Below are positions 4,656 through 10,981 of a stretch of DNA of 64,000 bases, piece by piece. Made by a program: the position numbers and the translations under genes. The stretch covers positions 124,001 through 188,000 of the IMG/VR virus record IMGVR_UViG_3300036770_007539. One strand, written 5' to 3'. Below the pieces are notes generated by a model. The model worked only from the letters and a program-made list of their open reading frames with translations, made no database searches and had not been told where the DNA came from. How positions within the stretch are numbered: position 1 is the stretch's first letter; each line of letters starts with the position of its first letter.

Positions 4656-4721
4656 GCTTTAGAACTATTGTTAGTTCATTCGTAAGACCGGAGTAAGTTT
4701 AATTTTTTATAAGGAATTCAC

Positions 4722-5369
4722 ATGGCTTTAAAACCTCTTAATCCAAAACATGAACCCTATGGCGTATTCGACGGACTTGATGCAGAAGTTACTGCTCTCA
4801 AAGGCGGCGAAGTTGTTGCTTTTACCTACGTCGCTAAAGGTAGCTCCGTAGACAAAGGCTCAGCCGATCTCAATGACGGCTACGTCTCTGATACCACTCA
4901 AACCCGTCCAGCAGTTACCAAAACTTTAGCATCTGGCGTTCGTCCCCTCTTCCTCGCTGATGAAGGCGTTTCCGGTTACGGTACACTCTTCGGCGTCGTC
5001 GTCGGCGGCACCTCAGGTCAACAAGTTTCAGGCTCTGCCCTCGGTCCTCACACCGCATACGCCTCTGGCAAAGTTACCCTCTGGGATGGTCCCGGTCTTT
5101 ATGCCGTTACCCTTGATGCAGTTGATACAACCGCAGCAACCGGCTTAACCAAAACCAACACCACCCTCGCTGGTAATGCAGCTCTCTACGCAACCTCAGC
5201 TGGTCTCTTAACCCCCAACTCCGCAGCTTCATTCGAAGTTGGTGGTCCAGTCGTCGGTCGCTTTATCGAATTTACCACCAATGGTTCATTCGTCACCACT
5301 CCATCAGATCTTGTAACCGGAGCAGTGAACTTCACTCAAGCAGTTCTCCGCTTCAAAGTAGAAGACTGA
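4722..5369 (+). CDS. Putative head decoration / capsid cement protein
   Basis: 215 aa, G/A/T/V-rich, immediately upstream of the MCP, with an AAGGA RBS and the same biased codon usage as the MCP. Confidence 0.65.
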   Translation: MALKPLNPKHEPYGVFDGLDAEVTALKGGEVVAFTYVAKGSSVDKGSADLNDGYVSDTTQTRPAVTKTLASGVRPLFLADEGVSGYGTLFGVVVGGTSGQQVSGSALGPHTAYASGKVTLWDGPGLYAVTLDAVDTTAATGLTKTNTTLAGNAALYATSAGLLTPNSAASFEVGGPVVGRFIEFTTNGSFVTTPSDLVTGAVNFTQAVLRFKVED

Positions 5370-5382
5370 TTTTGAAAAGATT

Positions 5383-5412
5383 TGAGGGGTGGCAGTCGCT
5401 GCCCCTCATTTG
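5383..5412 (+). terminator. GC-rich hairpin (weak terminator or processing stem) between decoration and MCP genes
   Basis: TGAGGGG...CCCCTCA inverted repeat followed by a short T run. Confidence 0.45.
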
Positions 5413-5475
5413 TCAAATAACAATAGAAATGCTTATCATTGTGATGAGCAGAATTAACTAAATAAGGATCCAATT

Positions 5476-8400
5476 ATGACTATGTTCAATTCAAAGGGCG
5501 AAGTTAACGCTTCTAGCGTTAAAGAAGCTCTCGAAGTTCTCTCAAAATATGCCTCAGTTGTTCAGAACGGTCTCCCCAGCAATTTCGCACTCGCTGGTCA
5601 ACCCGCTCTCTCCGATGAACGCCGTGACGAACTCGTTGCTCGCGCTATTTCCGACCAAAACGGCAAATTAGCTCTTGCACAAGCCATGGCTAACCCCATT
5701 AACCACTGATTTACGAGTGGGGTCTAAATTTGGCTATATGCTGGAAACTCTAAAAGCTTCAATACTTTGCACCCATACAAGCTAATCACCGTAGATAGCT
5801 TACCCATAGCAAAGTAAAAACTTGAAGATGACATAGACAATCAGCAGGAAAGATCGATAACATCGAAATCCCCAACGACTACATGCCAAACTCCTAAATA
5901 GGATGATGATATAGTCTGAACTTCATAGAAATATGAAGAGCTAAACAGAAATGATTTAGCCAGTCTCGGTAATCACTGTAACAAATGTCGTAAAAACTTA
6001 GATTACCAAGGTATCGCTCGTCGCGCCCTTGTAACCGATCCCTGAACATAGGTAGGGGATCTAAAATTTGGCTATATGCTGGGACAACTGAAAGCGAGAT
6101 TACTTGACTACACTATAGATTATGCACCGTAGCTAATCTTTTTAACCAAGTCAAGTTATAATATCAAGATGATACAGTTAATCAGCAGGAAAGATTTTAA
6201 TGATTGATAAAGATACTCTGTCCGAATTATACGTTAATAAAAATTTAACCTCCTACGAAATAGCTCAAATCTATCAAGTAGATAATTCCATCGTTCAAAA
6301 ACTTCTCATCGATCTCAATATCGATAAAAATCCTAAACAGCGTAAATATGAACTTATCAAAAAAGTTCCATTTACTCAGGAACAAAGAGATGCCATCGCT
6401 GGAATACTACTCGGTCAAAACCATGTCAAAAAACATGGAGACTCCTATAGATTAGAAGTTAAATATCCAGAATCAAAAAAAGAATTGACACTCTGGATTA
6501 AATCCATCTTAGGAAATTTTATTAACGTCATCCATAAAGAAGAAAAAAATAACTCGACTGTGCTTAGCCTTCAAACCGCTACCCATAACGAATTAAGCTT
6601 CTTCCACAAACTCTTTTATGAAAATAATAAAAAAGTAATTCGAACACAGCTAATCAATTATCTAACGCCTCTCTCTGTTGCTATATGGTTCTCTGATCAA
6701 GGAGAAATTAAAAATCATCTAACCATGAAATTTAATTCCAATAAGTTCTCCAAATCAGAACAAGAAACTCTTCAGTATATTCTAAAAGTTAAATTTAATG
6801 TTCGTACAAAAATTTGTACCTATCTTAAAAATAATATAGAATATCACTACCTCTCAGTTAATAAAGAAAATTCAGAAAAATTAACAGAGATAATTAAACC
6901 ATATGCAATATACTATCAATCTCTAAAATCCTCCTCAACGACTTTATGCCAAACATCTGAATCCAAAAATTTAGATGATGATAAAGTCTGATCTTCATAG
7001 GAACATGAAGAGCTAAGCAGAAATGACTTAGCTAGGGTAAATGCTCTATAACAATGCACCAATGTACCTCAAGGTGCTCTTCCCGTTTATCACCGTGATA
7101 TCGACGTAACCGCTGTTGTCGTTGCCAGCAACGGTTCACCTCCCGAATCACGTATCTTCGGCGAATCAGTCACAGTTCCTACTTTCGAACTTGCTTCAAA
7201 CCCCACCGTCCGTATCGCTGAAGTACGTCGTCGTCGCTTCAACGTTATCGACCGTGCAGTCCAAAAAGCTCGTCAAGAAATCATGGCTCAAGAAGACGCC
7301 AACGTCTTCGCAGCCCTTGATGCAGCTGCAAGCGTCGAAAACACCCTCCAAGACATTGCTGATACCGGTCTCCTCAAAGCCGACCTTCTCGAACTCAAAG
7401 CAGAAGTTGACAAATGGGACCTCGTAACCAGCAAATACTTCATGAACATCAAAGAATTCACCGATATCCTCAAATGGGCATCCGGTGGTGGTCAAGGAGC
7501 TGGTGGTGGTGAAATCGATCCCGTTAACTGTGTAGCGGCTTTAGCAGCGTGAGCAGCTAAAGAATAAAATTTGGCTATATGCTGGAAAATCTAGTAAGCA
7601 ATCTGTACTAAACATCCAAACAAACTTGGCACCGAGCCGGTTTAAAAAATAGTTTAGTAAAAATCAAATTGATATAGATGATCAGCAGGAAAAATCAATG
7701 AAAAAGATAGATATCCCAAAAGAAAAACTGATAGAATTATATTGTGAAAACAACCTCACAATGATTAAAATTGCAAAAATTTATAATGTAGACCGTACCA
7801 CGATCTCTAATAAATTAAAACAATTTCAAATTGATTCAAATCCAAATCAAAGAAAATATGAGAGCTTTAAAAATAAGCCCTTAACCAAAGAGCAAAAAGA
7901 TTTTATAGTCGGCTCTACTCTTGGAGATGCTTCAATTATACTTTCAGGTAGAAGAACAAGACCCTACTTTAAAGTATCTCACTGCGAGAAACAAAAAGAT
8001 TACCTAGTATGGAAAAAAGAAATTTTAGGCGATCTAGTAATAACAATTAGTAAAACTATAGATAAAAGAGGAAACTCTGTAATGTATGGTTTTAACACTG
8101 TCAGTCACGATGACCTAAGTTTTTTTAGAAAATTATTTTATATAGATAATAAAAAAATAATTAAAGATGAACTTAGCTCTCAATTATCTCCCCTGGGATT
8201 AGCTGTCTGGTTTATGGATGATGGTAGTAAATCAAATAAATGGAACTATAGATTTTCAACAGAAGGATTCTCCTACGAAGAAAATCTAAAACTAGCAAAT
8301 ATGTTAAAAATAAACTTTAATTTAAATGCTAAAGTTCTAGAATATACTAGAAGTAATAAAAAATATCACTACCTCTTCTTAAATAAAGAAAATGCAATCA

Positions 8401-8856
8401 ATATGACGAAAATAATTGAACCGTATATCGTTGATTGTATGAAATATAAACTAATTGATTGCTCCTCAACGACTACATGCCAAACTCCCGAAAAGGGATG
8501 ATGATATAGTCTGACCCATACAGGGATGTATGGAACTGAGCAGAAATGACTCAGTATGAATCAAAAAGATTCATTAACAATCTTGTACACAACGCGAAAT
8601 CCTCCAAACCGGTCTCTATGCTCGTATCTGGGGTGCAGACATCATGGTCAGCAAAATTGTTCCAGTTGGTACAGTTTACGCTTGCGCAGATCCGGAATTC
8701 GTTGGCGTCATGCCAGTAAGGCAAGACATCGAGGTATTACCCGCCGATGAGCCAAAGCGCCTCAGCCTCGGCTGGGTTGTTTCAGAAGAAATCGGCATCG
8801 GCATCCTCGTTCCACGCGGTGTTGCAGCTGGTCGCAAATCAGTAGCAGCAGGCTGA
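5476..8856 (+). CDS. Major capsid protein, spliced: join(5476..5699,5988..6043,7065..7524,8586..8856), 1011 nt = 336 aa
   Basis: Removing three group I introns restores one open frame: ...LAQAMANPI|RKNLDYQGIARRALVTDPL|PQGALPVYHRDID...GGEIDPV|TQREILQTGLYARIWGADIMVSK...SVAAG*. Size, position and highly biased codons fit an HK97-fold MCP. Confidence 0.9.
5700..5987 (+). ncRNA. Group I intron 1 of MCP (288 nt, no ORF)
   Basis: P1: exon ACCCCAU(5693-5699) pairs with GUGGGGU(5717-5723), with U.G at the splice site. P10: UUUACGA(5710-5716) pairs with 3' exon UCGUAAA. Terminal G5987. Core elements TTTGGC/GCCAAA (P3), AATCAGCAGG and GACTA/TAGTC (P7). Confidence 0.92.
6044..7064 (+). mobile_element. 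Group I intron 2 of MCP (1021 nt) carrying a LAGLIDADG-type ORF
   Basis: P1: exon GAUCCCU(6037-6043) pairs with GGGGAUC(6055-6061), with U.G. P10: AGGUA(6050-6054) pairs with 3' exon UACCU. Terminal G7064. Same core elements as intron 1. Confidence 0.92.
6200..6991 (+). CDS. Intron-encoded LAGLIDADG_2-like protein with N-terminal HTH; catalytic motifs eroded
   Basis: AIAGILLGQNH and AIWFSDQG align with the GxxLGD and WFMDDG motifs of the intron 3 ORF but lack the acidic catalytic residues. Confidence 0.8.
   Translation: MIDKDTLSELYVNKNLTSYEIAQIYQVDNSIVQKLLIDLNIDKNPKQRKYELIKKVPFTQEQRDAIAGILLGQNHVKKHGDSYRLEVKYPESKKELTLWIKSILGNFINVIHKEEKNNSTVLSLQTATHNELSFFHKLFYENNKKVIRTQLINYLTPLSVAIWFSDQGEIKNHLTMKFNSNKFSKSEQETLQYILKVKFNVRTKICTYLKNNIEYHYLSVNKENSEKLTEIIKPYAIYYQSLKSSSTTLCQTSESKNLDDDKV
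7525..8585 (+). mobile_element. Group I intron 3 of MCP (1061 nt) carrying a LAGLIDADG ORF
   Basis: P1: exon CCGU(7521-7524) pairs with GCGG(7535-7538), with U.G. P10: UGUGUA(7529-7534) pairs with 3' exon UACACA. Terminal G8585. Same core elements as introns 1 and 2. Confidence 0.92.
7698..8501 (+). CDS. Intron-encoded LAGLIDADG_2 homing endonuclease with N-terminal HTH
   Basis: FIVGSTLGDAS and LSPLGLAVWFMDDGS motifs; STEGFSYEE. Confidence 0.88.
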   Translation: MKKIDIPKEKLIELYCENNLTMIKIAKIYNVDRTTISNKLKQFQIDSNPNQRKYESFKNKPLTKEQKDFIVGSTLGDASIILSGRRTRPYFKVSHCEKQKDYLVWKKEILGDLVITISKTIDKRGNSVMYGFNTVSHDDLSFFRKLFYIDNKKIIKDELSSQLSPLGLAVWFMDDGSKSNKWNYRFSTEGFSYEENLKLANMLKINFNLNAKVLEYTRSNKKYHYLFLNKENAINMTKIIEPYIVDCMKYKLIDCSSTTTCQTPEKG

Positions 8857-8940
8857 TGAGCCGTAAATCGGCTGCTGATGAACCGTAATTTGGCACTAAC
8901 CTGCCGACGAACCTAAAATCACCTGCCGATGAACCGTAAA
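8849..8940 (+). repeat. Four degenerate direct repeats, consensus about CCTGCYGAYGARCC(G)TAAA; a fifth copy lies inside the MCP at 8739-8757
   Basis: GCYGAYGAR cores start at 8852, 8874, 8903 and 8925 (spacing 22, 29, 22 bp) and at 8743. Confidence 0.85.
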
Positions 8941-8969
8941 AGGGCGCTGGAGAAATCCGGCGTCCTTTT
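8938..8969. terminator. Bidirectional intrinsic terminator between the convergent MCP and methyltransferase genes
   Basis: AAAAGGGCGCTGGA-GAAA-TCCGGCGTCCTTTT hairpin flanked by A and T runs. Confidence 0.8.
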
Positions 8970-10981
8970 CATTTTTTGCGCATAACGATCACTGGTTCAT
9001 TTTTAGATTTTCCTTCCAATCCAGTATAACTTAGATACAATTCATGATCATAATTAAAATATCTAGAAGCTATTGTTAATAGATCTTGTTTGTACTTATC
9101 GGAAATATTAATAATAAAACGCCCATTAGGTTTTAGCATCTTTTCAATATTTTCACAGGTTTTAATCCAATATCCAAGATAGGCATCATAGGATCCTAGA
9201 TTGCATTGCGTAGCTTCTGAGGAATAGATTTCAGTATCGTAGTAGGGTGGGGAGCTAAAGGCTAAACAAACCTTTTGATGAAGATCTTCTTGGAAGAATA
9301 TTTCAGATCCGATATTGTGCAGGTTACATTTTTCTTGTTTAAAAATAGCTTTAGAAAGTTTAATTAAATTATTATAGGATTCTGTCCAAGGTTCTGTCCC
9401 TACATAAGTTAGATTTTTATTGGACGCCATAGCTCCAACTAATCTCTGACCGAAACCAGCGGAATAATCATAAACAATACCATCTTGTTCAGCATAGGTG
9501 TCGTAGATGAATTTAGCCACAGTAGTCATAAACATACTGGGAGAGCTAGAGGCTCTAGAGTTTTTAAATCCTTGTCTAAGCATTGCTCCAGAGATATTAA
9601 AAGTTTCTTTGTAAGAGATTCCAAGGCGATTATCTAAAACTTTTAATAATAGATCGTCTTTATGAAAAGCATCTATCATGGATATTTTTTTATCAAAAGA
9701 AACTTGATAAAAGTTTTCAAAAAAATGTTTAGTTAATTTGTTGCCGGTGTAGTTTTTAACTTTGATTAAAGTGCCTTCTAAAACTGTAGAGCTGTCAAAA
9801 TCTTTGATATCTTTCCATTCATTTAATAGTTCTAGGTCTGAAAATTTTGGGTAAGGAAATCCAAAGCCTCTAAAATAGGAGAAAAGGTAATTTTTAATTT
9901 CTTCTCTTTCTTTGAGGTTTAGGGAGGCGATATAATCTTTGGTTAATTTTTGATCATTGTAGGAGATGATATCTGTGGAACCATAGTTATAAGGAGCGTT
10001 TGTTTGATTTGATAATGGTGGTTCCAGAGATATTCTAGCTAAAGTTTCTAAATAGTTATTGTATTTTCTAGACATTTTAATGGTAGAATTATTATAGATC
10101 CAATCTCCCAATAATTTAAACTTTTTCACTCCATGAAACTCTAAATGCATAATATTCTTGCTATTTTCTCTATATTTAATTTTTTTGCTTTTGTATGGAA
10201 TAATGTTTAAATTCTTTTGAACGACTTCAGATATGGCACAAAGCAATTCATCGGTTCCAGTAATGGAAATTAGAGGGGTCTTATAGTTTAAGACCGACCC
10301 ATCCCCGTCAATTACACCTCTGATAAAATGTCTATCTAAGTCGGAATTTAATCCGATAGGATATTGATTGGTAAAAGTCTTATTGGGATGGCAACCAATT
10401 TCTCCAAGTCTTTGTTTTAATTTTTGAGAGCACATTCTAAAAGTAGCAATTTCTTTATTGTTTCCATCAGTATGGATCATGACCCGATCTTTTTTGTAAA
10501 AGAACATAGATAATTGTTTTAAAACATCTTGGTCTTTGGATAGTAAACGAATGCTAATGTCATTTCCATTTTTGGAGATATTGCCATCCGACCACATCAA
10601 ACCTAAGAAATAAGCTTTTTCTTCGCAATCAATTTGATCCAAGATAGATTCATCCAAAGGATAAATTCTTTTGGATTCCGAATCGCTGCGGGCTTCGATA
10701 TTATTTCTTTTCAGAATTCTAAGAATGGTAGTACTGTGAATATTTAATTCTTTGGCAAGAATTTCTGAAGAAACGCCATCTTGATATTTTTGGATAATAT
10801 ATTGAGTAGTTTCGCTGGAGACTCTTGGGGCGGCTTGAGTGCGTTCGATGCCTCTTTTCCTAAGGAGGCGGGTAACGGAATTATTGTAAACTCCTAATTT
10901 CTCTCCAATTTCTTTGGGAGAGACGCCTGCTTGATATAGGCTAATGACTTCTTGGATAGTTTCTTCGGGTAATTTTTTCAT
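8969..10981 (-). CDS. Fusion protein: two HTHs + LAGLIDADG endonuclease + amino-DNA methyltransferase (SPPY type)
   Basis: AYFLGLMWSDG and RHFIRGVIDGDG (LAGLIDADG); VYDYSAGFGQRL (SAM-binding motif I), VGTEP and AFSSPPYY (catalytic motif IV). The only long minus-strand gene in the window. Confidence 0.85.
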   Translation of the reverse strand: MKKLPEETIQEVISLYQAGVSPKEIGEKLGVYNNSVTRLLRKRGIERTQAAPRVSSETTQYIIQKYQDGVSSEILAKELNIHSTTILRILKRNNIEARSDSESKRIYPLDESILDQIDCEEKAYFLGLMWSDGNISKNGNDISIRLLSKDQDVLKQLSMFFYKKDRVMIHTDGNNKEIATFRMCSQKLKQRLGEIGCHPNKTFTNQYPIGLNSDLDRHFIRGVIDGDGSVLNYKTPLISITGTDELLCAISEVVQKNLNIIPYKSKKIKYRENSKNIMHLEFHGVKKFKLLGDWIYNNSTIKMSRKYNNYLETLARISLEPPLSNQTNAPYNYGSTDIISYNDQKLTKDYIASLNLKEREEIKNYLFSYFRGFGFPYPKFSDLELLNEWKDIKDFDSSTVLEGTLIKVKNYTGNKLTKHFFENFYQVSFDKKISMIDAFHKDDLLLKVLDNRLGISYKETFNISGAMLRQGFKNSRASSSPSMFMTTVAKFIYDTYAEQDGIVYDYSAGFGQRLVGAMASNKNLTYVGTEPWTESYNNLIKLSKAIFKQEKCNLHNIGSEIFFQEDLHQKVCLAFSSPPYYDTEIYSSEATQCNLGSYDAYLGYWIKTCENIEKMLKPNGRFIINISDKYKQDLLTIASRYFNYDHELYLSYTGLEGKSKNEPVIVMRKK

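What the first reader, a model, noticed from the sequence alone, without database searches (positions are those of the whole stretch)
6200..8501. Intact, catalytically eroded and empty introns side by side; the intron 2 protein may be a maturase
Seen: the intron 2 and 3 ORFs are paralogues (LSELYVNKNLT..IAQIYQVD..NPKQRKYE versus LIELYCENNLT..IAKIYNVD..NPNQRKYE). Intron 3 keeps LGD and MDDG. Intron 2 has LGQ and SDQG yet remains a full uninterrupted 263-aa ORF. Intron 1 has no ORF. Established: LAGLIDADG proteins can become RNA maturases in organelle introns. Inference: loss of both catalytic acids without frame decay suggests retention for RNA or DNA binding, possibly acting in trans on all three introns.
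Basis: partly seen in the sequence, partly recalled or inferred. Interest (0 to 1): 0.62.

Follow-up and report, generated by a model that had tools for sequence, protein, structure and literature searches.

The report
Nuclease-dead intron protein kept by selection
A giant phage's capsid gene is split by three related self-splicing introns, and the protein encoded in the middle one has lost its DNA-cutting residues yet has been strictly conserved across many related phages, so it has been kept for a new job, most plausibly helping the intron RNA to splice.

Summary
An HK97-type major capsid gene of a Phage-G-like jumbo phage (exons 5476-5699, 5988-6043, 7065-7524, 8586-8856) carries three homologous group I introns. 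Intron 1 has no ORF. Intron 2 encodes ORF2, with Q at both catalytic positions. Intron 3 encodes ORF3, which keeps D/D. Both ORFs are I-SceI-family LAGLIDADG_2 proteins with an N-terminal HTH.

Nine further ORF2 orthologues (78-99% identity) sit in the same capsid-gene intron site wherever flanking exon sequence is available. All are full length and all lack both acids (Q/R/H and Q/L). dN/dS is 0.10-0.20 at dS up to 1.1, the same as in active relatives, and omega = 1 is rejected. This group nests in a larger, deeply diverged clade of about 30 nuclease-dead proteins. ORF2 has diverged about as much as neighbouring genes, whereas ORF3 looks recently spread.

ORF2 is therefore not a decaying homing endonuclease but an exapted protein. 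A maturase role is the best-precedented reading but is untested. The intron 2 ribozyme shows no visible decay. A non-cleaving DNA-binding role remains a serious rival. Action in trans on all three introns is only weakly suggested.

The parts
5476..5699 (+). Major capsid protein exon 1 (ends in phase 2 after ...AAC CCC AT)
   Evidence: The ORF list and sequence give the reading frame. The spliced product is collinear with intron-less alleles. The junction string matches L049 and L085.
5700..5987 (+). Intron 1: ORF-less group I intron, 288 nt
   Evidence: It matches Rfam RF00028 at 75.3 bits, E 3e-17. P1 is CCCCAU/GUGGGG with a U.G pair at the splice site, and the intron ends in G. An in-frame stop lies 3 codons into the intron. 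No ORF remnant was found.
5988..6043 (+). Capsid exon 2 (56 nt)
   Evidence: It encodes (I)RKNLDYQGIARRALVTDP, which is collinear with intron-less alleles.
6044..7064 (+). Intron 2: group I intron, 1021 nt, with ORF2 in the P6 loop
   Evidence: It shares core blocks with introns 1 and 3. P1 is AUCCCU/GGGGAU. A TGA spans the 5' splice site. P7 is kept by a compensatory change (GACUU/AAGUC versus GACUA/UAGUC). P7, P9 and P9.1 covary across 25 introns.
6200..6991 (+). ORF2: nuclease-dead LAGLIDADG_2 protein, 263 aa. It has an HTH (residues 4-38) and two LAGLIDADG domains. The tail (239-263) is encoded by ribozyme core P6'-P8. Q73 is at 6416-6418 and Q167 at 6698-6700.
   Evidence: Pfam assigns the family. 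The I-SceI alignment maps the catalytic positions. The AlphaFold2 model has mean pLDDT 89.6. Foldseek finds I-WcaI and I-SceI as best matches. The orthologues are aligned, and dN/dS is given.
7065..7524 (+). Capsid exon 3
   Evidence: It is 99-100% identical to L001-L006 and 76-83% identical to many jumbo-phage capsid genes. The nearest isolate is the Bacillus phage G major head protein at 48%.
7525..8585 (+). Intron 3: group I intron, 1061 nt, with ORF3 in the P6 loop
   Evidence: It carries the shared core blocks. P1 is CCGU/GCGG and the intron ends in G. It is absent from the 99%-identical capsid alleles L003-L006.
7698..8501 (+). ORF3: LAGLIDADG_2 homing endonuclease, 267 aa, that keeps both catalytic Asp (D77 at 7926-7928, D175 at 8220-8222) and the conserved H/Q/K/T active-site periphery
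   Evidence: Its dS against the L086 copy is 0.10, while neighbouring genes of the same two phages differ by 0.7.
8586..8856 (+). Capsid exon 4 with stop codon
   Evidence: The exon 3/4 junction matches the intron-less alleles L005 and L003.

Best explanation
Shown: the window carries the major capsid gene of a Phage-G-like jumbo phage, interrupted by three paralogous group I introns. ORF2, in intron 2, is an I-SceI-family LAGLIDADG protein with an N-terminal HTH. It has lost both metal-binding aspartates and several further active-site residues. It belongs to an old, diversified clade of such nuclease-dead intron proteins. It is translated and held under purifying selection as strong as that on active relatives. 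Unlike ORF3, it behaves as a long-resident element rather than a recently spreading one.

Inferred: the protein has been exapted as a splicing cofactor (maturase). On this reading it binds the folded or folding ribozyme of its own intron, and possibly the near-identical cores of introns 1 and 3, and speeds formation of the active RNA in a very highly expressed late gene. Once the intron depends on the protein, loss of the ORF would block capsid production, which locks the ORF in.

I put about 0.9 on 'dead nuclease retained for another function'. The confidence given below is for the maturase mechanism itself.
For: Catalytic loss:
- Q73 and Q167 align to the LGD and DDG motifs of I-SceI.
- These positions are D/D in 47 of 47 relatives outside the clade. 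Within the clade they are Q/R/H and Q/L.
- H89, K92, Q93, K100 and T180, which are 81-96% conserved in active relatives, are also replaced, while fold-defining residues are kept.

Fold:
- The AlphaFold2 model has mean pLDDT 89.6.
- The best structural matches are I-WcaI and I-SceI at target-normalised TM 0.70-0.72.

Selection:
- Ten orthologous coding sequences are all full length. Pairwise dN/dS is 0.10-0.20 with dS 0.3-1.1.
- Bootstrap 95% intervals lie between 0.09 and 0.31.
- The codon model gives lnL -3166.6 with omega free against -3405.1 with omega = 1 and kappa fixed at 2.
- Active clades give omega 0.07-0.25.

Age and breadth:
- With 10 active-site columns removed, all 20 dead sequences form one clade. 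Support is UFboot 85 and SH-aLRT 96, and 83% of bootstrap trees need a single change. Tip branches are 0.4-0.9 substitutions per site.
- More dead members were found.

Resident behaviour:
- Between the window and L086, ORF2 dS is 0.63, neighbouring genes 0.71-0.77, and ORF3 0.10.

Shift of constraint:
- The C-terminal-domain hairpin 168-182 has pN 0.005 at pS 0.48 and no variable column, against 13-53% variable columns in active clades.
- Strands 108-126 of the N-terminal domain are relaxed.
- From memory, unverified here: the C-terminal domain of I-AniI suffices for maturase activity.

The ribozyme is functional:
- The part of ORF2 that overlaps the core has dS 0.15 against about 0.8 elsewhere.
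- P7, P9 and P9.1 covary: 17 of 22 pairs change on both sides, and 0 of 500 shuffles reach the observed score.

Precedent:
- Organellar LAGLIDADG maturases, the yeast homologous endonuclease/maturase pair, and a bacterial 23S-intron LAGLIDADG maturase (PMC3943268, PMC3984707).

Circumstantial:
- ORF-less introns of this family occur only in capsid genes that also hold an ORF-bearing intron.
Against: - No RNA-binding or splicing data exist.
- Dead-lineage introns keep every core helix and show no visible loss of structure that would call for a protein.
- The same intron family works in phages with no dead-clade protein, for example L005, L006 and L029.
- Across the wider dead clade the beta-saddle residues differ between sub-lineages that sit at different insertion sites. 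This looks more like site-specific recognition than binding to the shared ribozyme core.
- The DNA-binding-type HTH is retained at omega 0.17.
- Charge and pI do not differ from active relatives.
- dN/dS was measured in one sub-lineage only.
Confidence: 0.45

Rival explanations
1. ORF2 is a non-cleaving, sequence-specific DNA-binding protein. It would still recognise a DNA site, such as its ancestral homing site or an operator, through the HTH and the C-terminal half-saddle. It could act as a regulator (as I-TevI autorepression or WhiA do), as a roadblock on competing intron-less genomes, or as a recombination stimulator without cutting.
For: - The HTH is retained at omega 0.17 and the linker at 0.08.
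- The C-terminal beta-hairpin, which contacts DNA in I-SceI-type enzymes, is invariant within the clade.
- Saddle residues differ between dead sub-lineages at different sites, as specificity residues do.
- Foldseek also finds WhiA, a dead LAGLIDADG plus HTH transcription factor.
- I-TevI is a precedent for a second, DNA-binding role (PMC3943268).
Against: - The homing site in the phage's own genome is split by the intron, so no target in cis is obvious.
- Strands 108-126 of the N-terminal half-saddle are relaxed (pN 0.27), so full-site recognition is not being maintained.
- No conserved candidate operator was identified.
- Long-term residence with the genome fits an 'addictive' splicing role more simply.
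Confidence: 0.3
2. ORF2 is an ordinary homing endonuclease gene caught in the degeneration phase of the invasion-decay-loss cycle. On this view its open frame is a matter of recency.
For: All three stages (active, dead, empty) lie side by side in one gene. Intron occupancy varies among 99%-identical capsid alleles, as the cycle predicts.
Against: - Ten orthologues down to 78% identity are all intact.
- dN/dS is 0.10-0.20 at dS up to 1.1, and omega = 1 is rejected by 238 log-likelihood units.
- Constraint equals that of active clades.
- The dead state is shared by a deep clade.
Confidence: 0.03
3. ORF2 still cuts or nicks DNA with a non-canonical active site.
For: The fold, both LAGLIDADG helices and D166 next to Q167 are kept.
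Against: - The two metal-binding positions are Q/R/H and Q/L among orthologues, so no single substitute chemistry is conserved.
- Periphery residues are lost as well.
- Metal-binding residues in this family are D or E (PMC6294521).
- ORF2 shows none of the recent spread seen for ORF3.
Confidence: 0.05
4. ORF2 acts through protein-protein contacts. For example, it could modulate or inhibit an active paralogue such as ORF3 or an incoming site-2 enzyme, or recruit another nuclease.
For: Dead and active paralogues often share one capsid gene (window, L086, L090, L099).
Against: L004 carries the dead ORF without intron 3. Monomeric I-SceI-type enzymes have no known partner interface. No test was made.
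Confidence: 0.07

Closest known systems
Yeast mitochondrial bI4 maturase and aI4 endonuclease (I-SceII): two homologous intron-encoded LAGLIDADG proteins, one a maturase and one an endonuclease (cited in PMC3943268)
   Same: Paralogous LAGLIDADG proteins in related group I introns, one keeping cleavage and the other kept for a non-cleaving role.
   Different: That pair is organellar and split between two genes. Here both lie in one phage capsid gene, belong to the I-SceI/LAGLIDADG_2 branch and carry an extra N-terminal HTH. Maturase activity is unproven here.
bI3 maturase (PDB 2ab5) and the bifunctional I-AniI (PDB 1p8k)
   Same: Intron-encoded two-domain LAGLIDADG proteins that bind their own group I intron. 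bI3 has no nuclease activity. Both appear among the Foldseek matches.
   Different: The structural match is only distant (TM 0.44-0.47) and sequence identity is 13%. They lack the HTH and are mitochondrial.
I-SceI and I-WcaI homing endonucleases
   Same: They are the closest solved relatives by sequence (E 1e-9) and by fold (target-normalised TM 0.70-0.72). They have the same two-motif monomer.
   Different: I-SceI has aspartates in its LGD and DDG motifs where ORF2 has Q73 and Q167, and it cleaves DNA.
Thermotoga neapolitana 23S rRNA intron LAGLIDADG maturase (Mo et al. 2011, as cited in PMC3984707)
   Same: It is the only bacterial example of a group I intron LAGLIDADG protein that activates its own intron.
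   Different: It sits in a bacterial rRNA gene, not a phage protein-coding gene, and no dead clade has been described for it.
WhiA/DUF199
   Same: A nuclease-dead LAGLIDADG scaffold fused to an HTH and kept as a DNA-binding regulator. It appears among the Foldseek matches.
   Different: It is a free-standing chromosomal gene with a C-terminal HTH, and the fold match is weak (TM 0.4-0.58).
Degraded LAGLIDADG genes in coral mitochondrial cox1 introns (PMC5344465)
   Same: LAGLIDADG ORFs of doubtful activity that persist inside group I introns.
   Different: Those are discussed as degradation within the homing cycle. I did not read that paper beyond the listing returned by the search.

Membership tests
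Group I intron | Conserved catalytic core (P3-P9) recognisable by covariance model or covariation | tested here: met
   Intron 1 scores 75.3 bits on RF00028 against a gathering score of 50. Introns 2 and 3 give only partial hits of 22 and 15 bits because their ORFs split the model. They share exact core blocks with intron 1. P7, P9 and P9.1 covary across 25 family members.
Group I intron | 5' exon ends in U paired to G in P1; intron ends in G; removal restores the host reading frame | tested here: met
   All three introns follow a U and end in G. P1 pairings can be read from the sequence. The spliced product is collinear with intron-less alleles.
Group I intron | Self-splicing with guanosine cofactor | not testable with these tools
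   This needs in vitro transcription and splicing, or metatranscriptome reads across the junctions.
LAGLIDADG_2 (I-SceI-type) homing endonuclease | Two LAGLIDADG helices in a pseudo-symmetric alpha-beta-beta-alpha-beta-beta-alpha fold | tested here: met
   Pfam PF03161 matches at E 3e-26. The AlphaFold2 model has pLDDT 89.6 with the expected elements. Foldseek finds I-WcaI and I-SceI.
LAGLIDADG_2 (I-SceI-type) homing endonuclease | Acidic metal-binding residue (D or E) at the end of each LAGLIDADG motif | tested here: not met
   ORF2 has Q73 and Q167, and its orthologues have Q/R/H and Q/L. ORF3 meets the feature with D77 and D175.
LAGLIDADG_2 (I-SceI-type) homing endonuclease | Cleaves the intron-less allele and drives homing | not testable with these tools
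   Indirect evidence only: ORF3 shows recent spread (dS 0.10 against a background of 0.7), and ORF2 does not.
LAGLIDADG intron maturase | Encoded inside the group I intron it serves, and translated | tested here: met
   The ORF lies in the P6 loop, with AGGA of P6 7-9 nt upstream of the ATG. Amino-acid-level purifying selection implies translation.
LAGLIDADG intron maturase | Maintained by selection independently of nuclease activity | tested here: met
   dN/dS is 0.10-0.20 in a clade that lacks both catalytic acids.
LAGLIDADG intron maturase | Binds its intron RNA specifically and is needed for, or stimulates, splicing | not testable with these tools
   This is the defining feature, so membership stays open. 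There is no sign that the RNA core has decayed.
Degenerating homing endonuclease gene (homing cycle) | Relaxed selection: omega near 1, with frameshifts or stops in orthologues | tested here: not met
   All 10 orthologues are intact. Omega is about 0.15 and omega = 1 is rejected.
WhiA-like domesticated LAGLIDADG regulator | Nuclease-dead LAGLIDADG domain plus HTH in a free-standing cellular gene that binds promoters | tested here: inconclusive
   A dead LAGLIDADG with an HTH is present, but the HTH is N-terminal and the gene is intron-borne. The fold match is weak. DNA binding was not tested.

The most novel reading that the evidence does not exclude
An ancient clade of nuclease-dead LAGLIDADG proteins has been domesticated in jumbo-phage capsid genes as the first phage-encoded group I intron maturases. 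One such protein would serve several near-identical introns of the same transcript in trans, including the ORF-less ones, which would explain how capsid genes with three or four introns and a 12-nt micro-exon remain viable.
Probability: 0.3. Interest if true: 0.8.

Novelty: new variant of a known kind. Interest (0 to 1): 0.66.

Why it matters
Phage group I introns are usually treated as self-sufficient ribozymes that carry purely selfish endonucleases. In the review read here, intron-encoded maturases appear as an organellar speciality with a single bacterial case (PMC3984707).

Here a whole clade of intron proteins has given up DNA cutting yet has been conserved as strictly as working enzymes, inside the most highly expressed structural gene of giant phages. 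That shows a selfish endonuclease being converted into something the phage or the intron cannot lose.

It also offers a clean natural experiment. Active, dead and empty introns of one family occur in otherwise 99%-identical capsid genes, which lets one test how maturases or other exapted functions arise.

The system is small and tractable: one RNA of about 290 nt without the ORF, and one 263-aa protein.

Tried and rejected
- A megablast of 4700-9000 against 50,697 phage records found nothing. By protein, the nearest isolate is Bacillus phage G at 48%.
- Rfam cannot score introns 2 and 3 as wholes because the ORFs split the model. Only partial hits of 22 and 15 bits were obtained.
- The metagenome-contig scan with the dead-clade alignment returned only two loci, both already known.
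- Viral-contig scans with P0044, P0050, P0206 and P0042 found nothing. As a result dN/dS could be measured in only one dead sub-lineage.
- A first quick tree put P0040 outside the dead clade. The careful tree without active-site columns puts it inside. An AU test of the 19 sequences without P0040 was not significant (p 0.41).
- I looked for visible decay of the ribozyme in dead-lineage introns (missing helices or broken pairs) and found none.
- I compared charge and pI of dead and active proteins as a crude pointer to RNA binding and found no difference.
- Exon 3 dS (0.14-0.30) at first suggested that ORF2 was older than its host gene. Neighbouring genes (dS 0.7) showed instead that the capsid exons are unusually slow.
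- Bolduc et al. 2003 on the I-AniI RNA surface is not held. The statement that the C-terminal domain suffices for maturase activity therefore rests on memory.
- No protein-complex prediction was run, because no protein-protein claim is made.
Full report
**What is at the locus**

The region 5476-8856 (+) is one gene for an HK97-type major capsid protein, split into four exons: 5476-5699, 5988-6043, 7065-7524 and 8586-8856. Joining them gives a 336-aa protein with no stop. It is collinear over its full length with about 60 uninterrupted capsid genes from viral contigs of 100-470 kb. The window matches a 301-kb contig at 100% identity over both the capsid exon and ORF2. The nearest cultured relative is the major head protein of Bacillus phage G, at 48% identity.

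The junctions at sites 1 and 3 match intron-less alleles at nucleotide level. All three introns follow a U and end in G. P1 pairings with a U.G at the splice site can be read directly: CCCCAU/GUGGGG, AUCCCU/GGGGAU and CCGU/GCGG. An in-frame stop lies at, or within nine codons of, each 5' splice site.

**The three introns are paralogues**

Intron 1 (5700-5987) matches Rfam RF00028 end to end at 75 bits. Two core blocks of 18 and 19 nt occur exactly three times in the 64 kb, once per intron, against 0.16 and 0.01 expected by chance.

In introns 2 and 3 the ORF sits in the P6 loop and starts 131-138 nt after the P3 block. The AGGA of P6 serves as the ribosome-binding site. The ORF then runs on through P6', P7, P3' and P8. 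Intron 1 has a 17-nt hairpin at that place and no ORF remnant.

Across 25 introns of this family, P7, P9 and P9.1 are supported by covariation. Of all cells, 88.9% are paired, against 30-48% when partners are slid. Seventeen of 22 pairs change on both sides, and 0 of 500 shuffles reach the observed score. Intron 2 keeps P7 through a compensatory change (GACUU/AAGUC). P3 and P1 also covary with their partners in relatives.

**The two proteins**

ORF2 (263 aa) and ORF3 (267 aa) are 41% identical, and both are Pfam LAGLIDADG_2. The closest solved relative is I-SceI. A profile of the ORF2 clade places Q73 opposite the aspartate of its LGD motif and Q167 opposite the second aspartate of its DDG motif. 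The metal-binding residue at the end of each LAGLIDADG helix is D or E in this superfamily (PMC6294521).

ORF3 has D77 and D175. The AlphaFold2 model of ORF2 is confident (mean pLDDT 89.6). It shows a three-helix HTH (residues 4-38), a linker helix, two LAGLIDADG domains, and a disordered tail (239-263) that corresponds exactly to the part encoded by the ribozyme core. Foldseek ranks I-WcaI and I-SceI first.

The protein database holds nine further clusters at 78-99% identity to ORF2, followed by a gap down to 54%. All nine are 251-263 aa. All lack both acids: position 73 is Q, R or H, and position 167 is Q or L. By contrast, 47 of 47 relatives outside this group keep D/D.

I recovered DNA for all nine. 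Wherever flanking exon sequence is present, the ORF lies in an intron between capsid residues 93 and 94, in capsid genes 97-100% identical to the window's. L093 has only the downstream exon.

Outside the core overlap, pairwise Nei-Gojobori dN/dS is 0.10-0.20 at dS 0.3-1.1. Bootstrap intervals lie between 0.09 and 0.31. A codon model with omega free fits 238 log-likelihood units better than one with omega = 1. Active clades of the same family give 0.07-0.25.

The constraint acts on the protein, not the RNA. Synonymous change is near saturation everywhere except in the last 25 codons. There dS drops to 0.15 and omega rises to 0.68, as expected if that stretch is constrained as ribozyme and the tail is dispensable as protein.

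**What was lost and what was kept**

Among positions at least 80% conserved in active relatives, the ORF2 clade has replaced the two aspartates, G74, H89, K92, Q93, K100, T180, and (near or in the tail) M240, Y242 and S256. It keeps the structural residues G68, L71, G72, Y140, K145, A161, W163, D166, G168, F183 and F199.

Within the clade, the C-terminal-domain hairpin 168-182 has no variable column (pN 0.005 at pS 0.48). Active clades of similar depth vary at 13-53% of these columns. Strands 108-126 of the N-terminal domain are relaxed, with pN 0.27. The pattern of constraint has shifted, which argues for a changed ligand rather than maintained recognition of the full homing site.

**A larger dead clade**

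An exhaustive search of cluster representatives showed that 22 of 136 comparable relatives lack one or both acids. With ten active-site columns removed, a careful maximum-likelihood tree joins all 20 fully dead sequences in one clade. Support is UFboot 85 and SH-aLRT 96, a single change of state suffices, and 83% of bootstrap trees agree. Tip branches are 0.4-0.9 substitutions per site. The ORF2 group (100/100) sits on a long stem.

A profile search added six more dead clusters and one half-dead cluster. Two of the distant dead members were placed in context. Both lie in group I introns of the same capsid gene family, but at residues 74-76 rather than 93/94. In one of them the gene also carries an active D/D paralogue in the site-3 intron. 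How a dead lineage came to occupy two sites is unexplained. Exchange of ORFs or intron halves between the very similar introns is plausible, because the 5' half of window intron 1 nearly equals the site-2 intron of L006.

**Resident versus mobile**

Between the window and L086, two neighbouring genes differ by dS 0.71-0.77, ORF2 by 0.63, and ORF3 by only 0.10. The capsid exons are slow (dS 0.20), probably through codon selection. They are 45-54% GC against 29-33% in the intron ORFs.

Intron 3 is missing from the 99%-identical alleles L003-L006. Site 2 holds the dead ORF in the window and L004, an active D/D ORF of another lineage in L006, or an ORF-less derivative of that active lineage in L005. 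ORF3 thus behaves like a currently homing element, and ORF2 like a long-term resident.

**Mechanism**

The evidence establishes a nuclease-dead protein retained by selection. It does not say for what. A maturase role has the best precedent:
- organellar maturases generally;
- the yeast pair of one endonuclease and one homologous maturase;
- I-AniI;
- a bacterial 23S-intron case (PMC3943268, PMC3984707).

A maturase would explain lock-in inside an essential, highly expressed gene. It also fits the dominance of C-terminal-domain constraint.

Several points count against it. The ribozymes of the dead lineage show no visible weakness. The intron family functions in phages without any dead-clade protein. 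Saddle residues differ between dead sub-lineages at different sites. The HTH is retained. A non-cleaving DNA-binding role is therefore a serious rival.

For action in trans there is one circumstantial pattern. ORF-less introns of this family (window, L004, L086, L090, L005, L083) are found only in capsid genes that also hold an ORF-bearing intron. None is found among about 60 genes without one. These cases represent only about three independent lineages.

**Novelty**

Group I introns in jumbo-phage genes are known (PMC12880540, PMC11620839). So are LAGLIDADG maturases and domesticated dead LAGLIDADG proteins. In the library searched, I found no report of a conserved nuclease-dead LAGLIDADG clade in phage introns, nor of a phage intron maturase. 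I rate this a new variant of a known kind.

Noticed in passing
window 8969-10981 (-): A 670-aa fusion of two HTH domains, a LAGLIDADG_3 domain that keeps its aspartates, and an N6/N4 DNA methylase (SPPY motif). It lies tail-to-tail with the capsid gene. It is conserved in L086/L087 (92% identity, omega 0.06) and in L099. L098 has a 365-aa form without the methylase. It may be a free-standing homing endonuclease joined to its own protective methylase.
   Followed up: partly
L086 3230-3780; L090 365-945: Close relatives carry four introns in the capsid gene. An extra ORF-less intron after residue 70 and the counterpart of intron 1 are separated by a 12-nt micro-exon (GGCAAATCCCAT).
   Followed up: partly
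window 6035-6043|7065-7067 and 7515-7524|8586-8588: Insertion sites 2 and 3 share CGATCCC(G)T|TAC. This suggests that one intron arose from the other by ectopic homing or reverse splicing into a look-alike site.
   Followed up: no
window 5724-5860 versus L006 2190-2320: The 5' half of ORF-less intron 1 is almost identical to the site-2 intron of L006, which carries an active endonuclease. The ORF-less site-2 intron of L005 derives from that same lineage. Introns or intron halves move between sites.
   Followed up: partly
window 8857-8975: Three copies of CTGCYGAYGAACCKTAA lie between the capsid stop codon and a strong terminator hairpin (8941-8975). The hairpin gave a sub-threshold match to the sRNA family BjrC68.
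   Followed up: no
window 4722-5369 and L004: The window and L004 share a nearly identical capsid gene plus intron 2 (dS 0.04-0.08), but the adjacent 215-aa GC-rich gene differs by dS 0.83. The capsid block has been exchanged between otherwise diverged phages.
   Followed up: partly
P0189: One relative has N at the first catalytic position but keeps D at the second. It is a possible natural nickase or an early stage of inactivation.
   Followed up: no
P0017, P0020, P0024, P0027, P0032, P0203: Several active relatives are named 'recombination protein RecA' by one source. At least one of them (P0032) is identical to an ORF in a capsid-gene intron (L085), so the name is probably an annotation artefact.
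   Followed up: no
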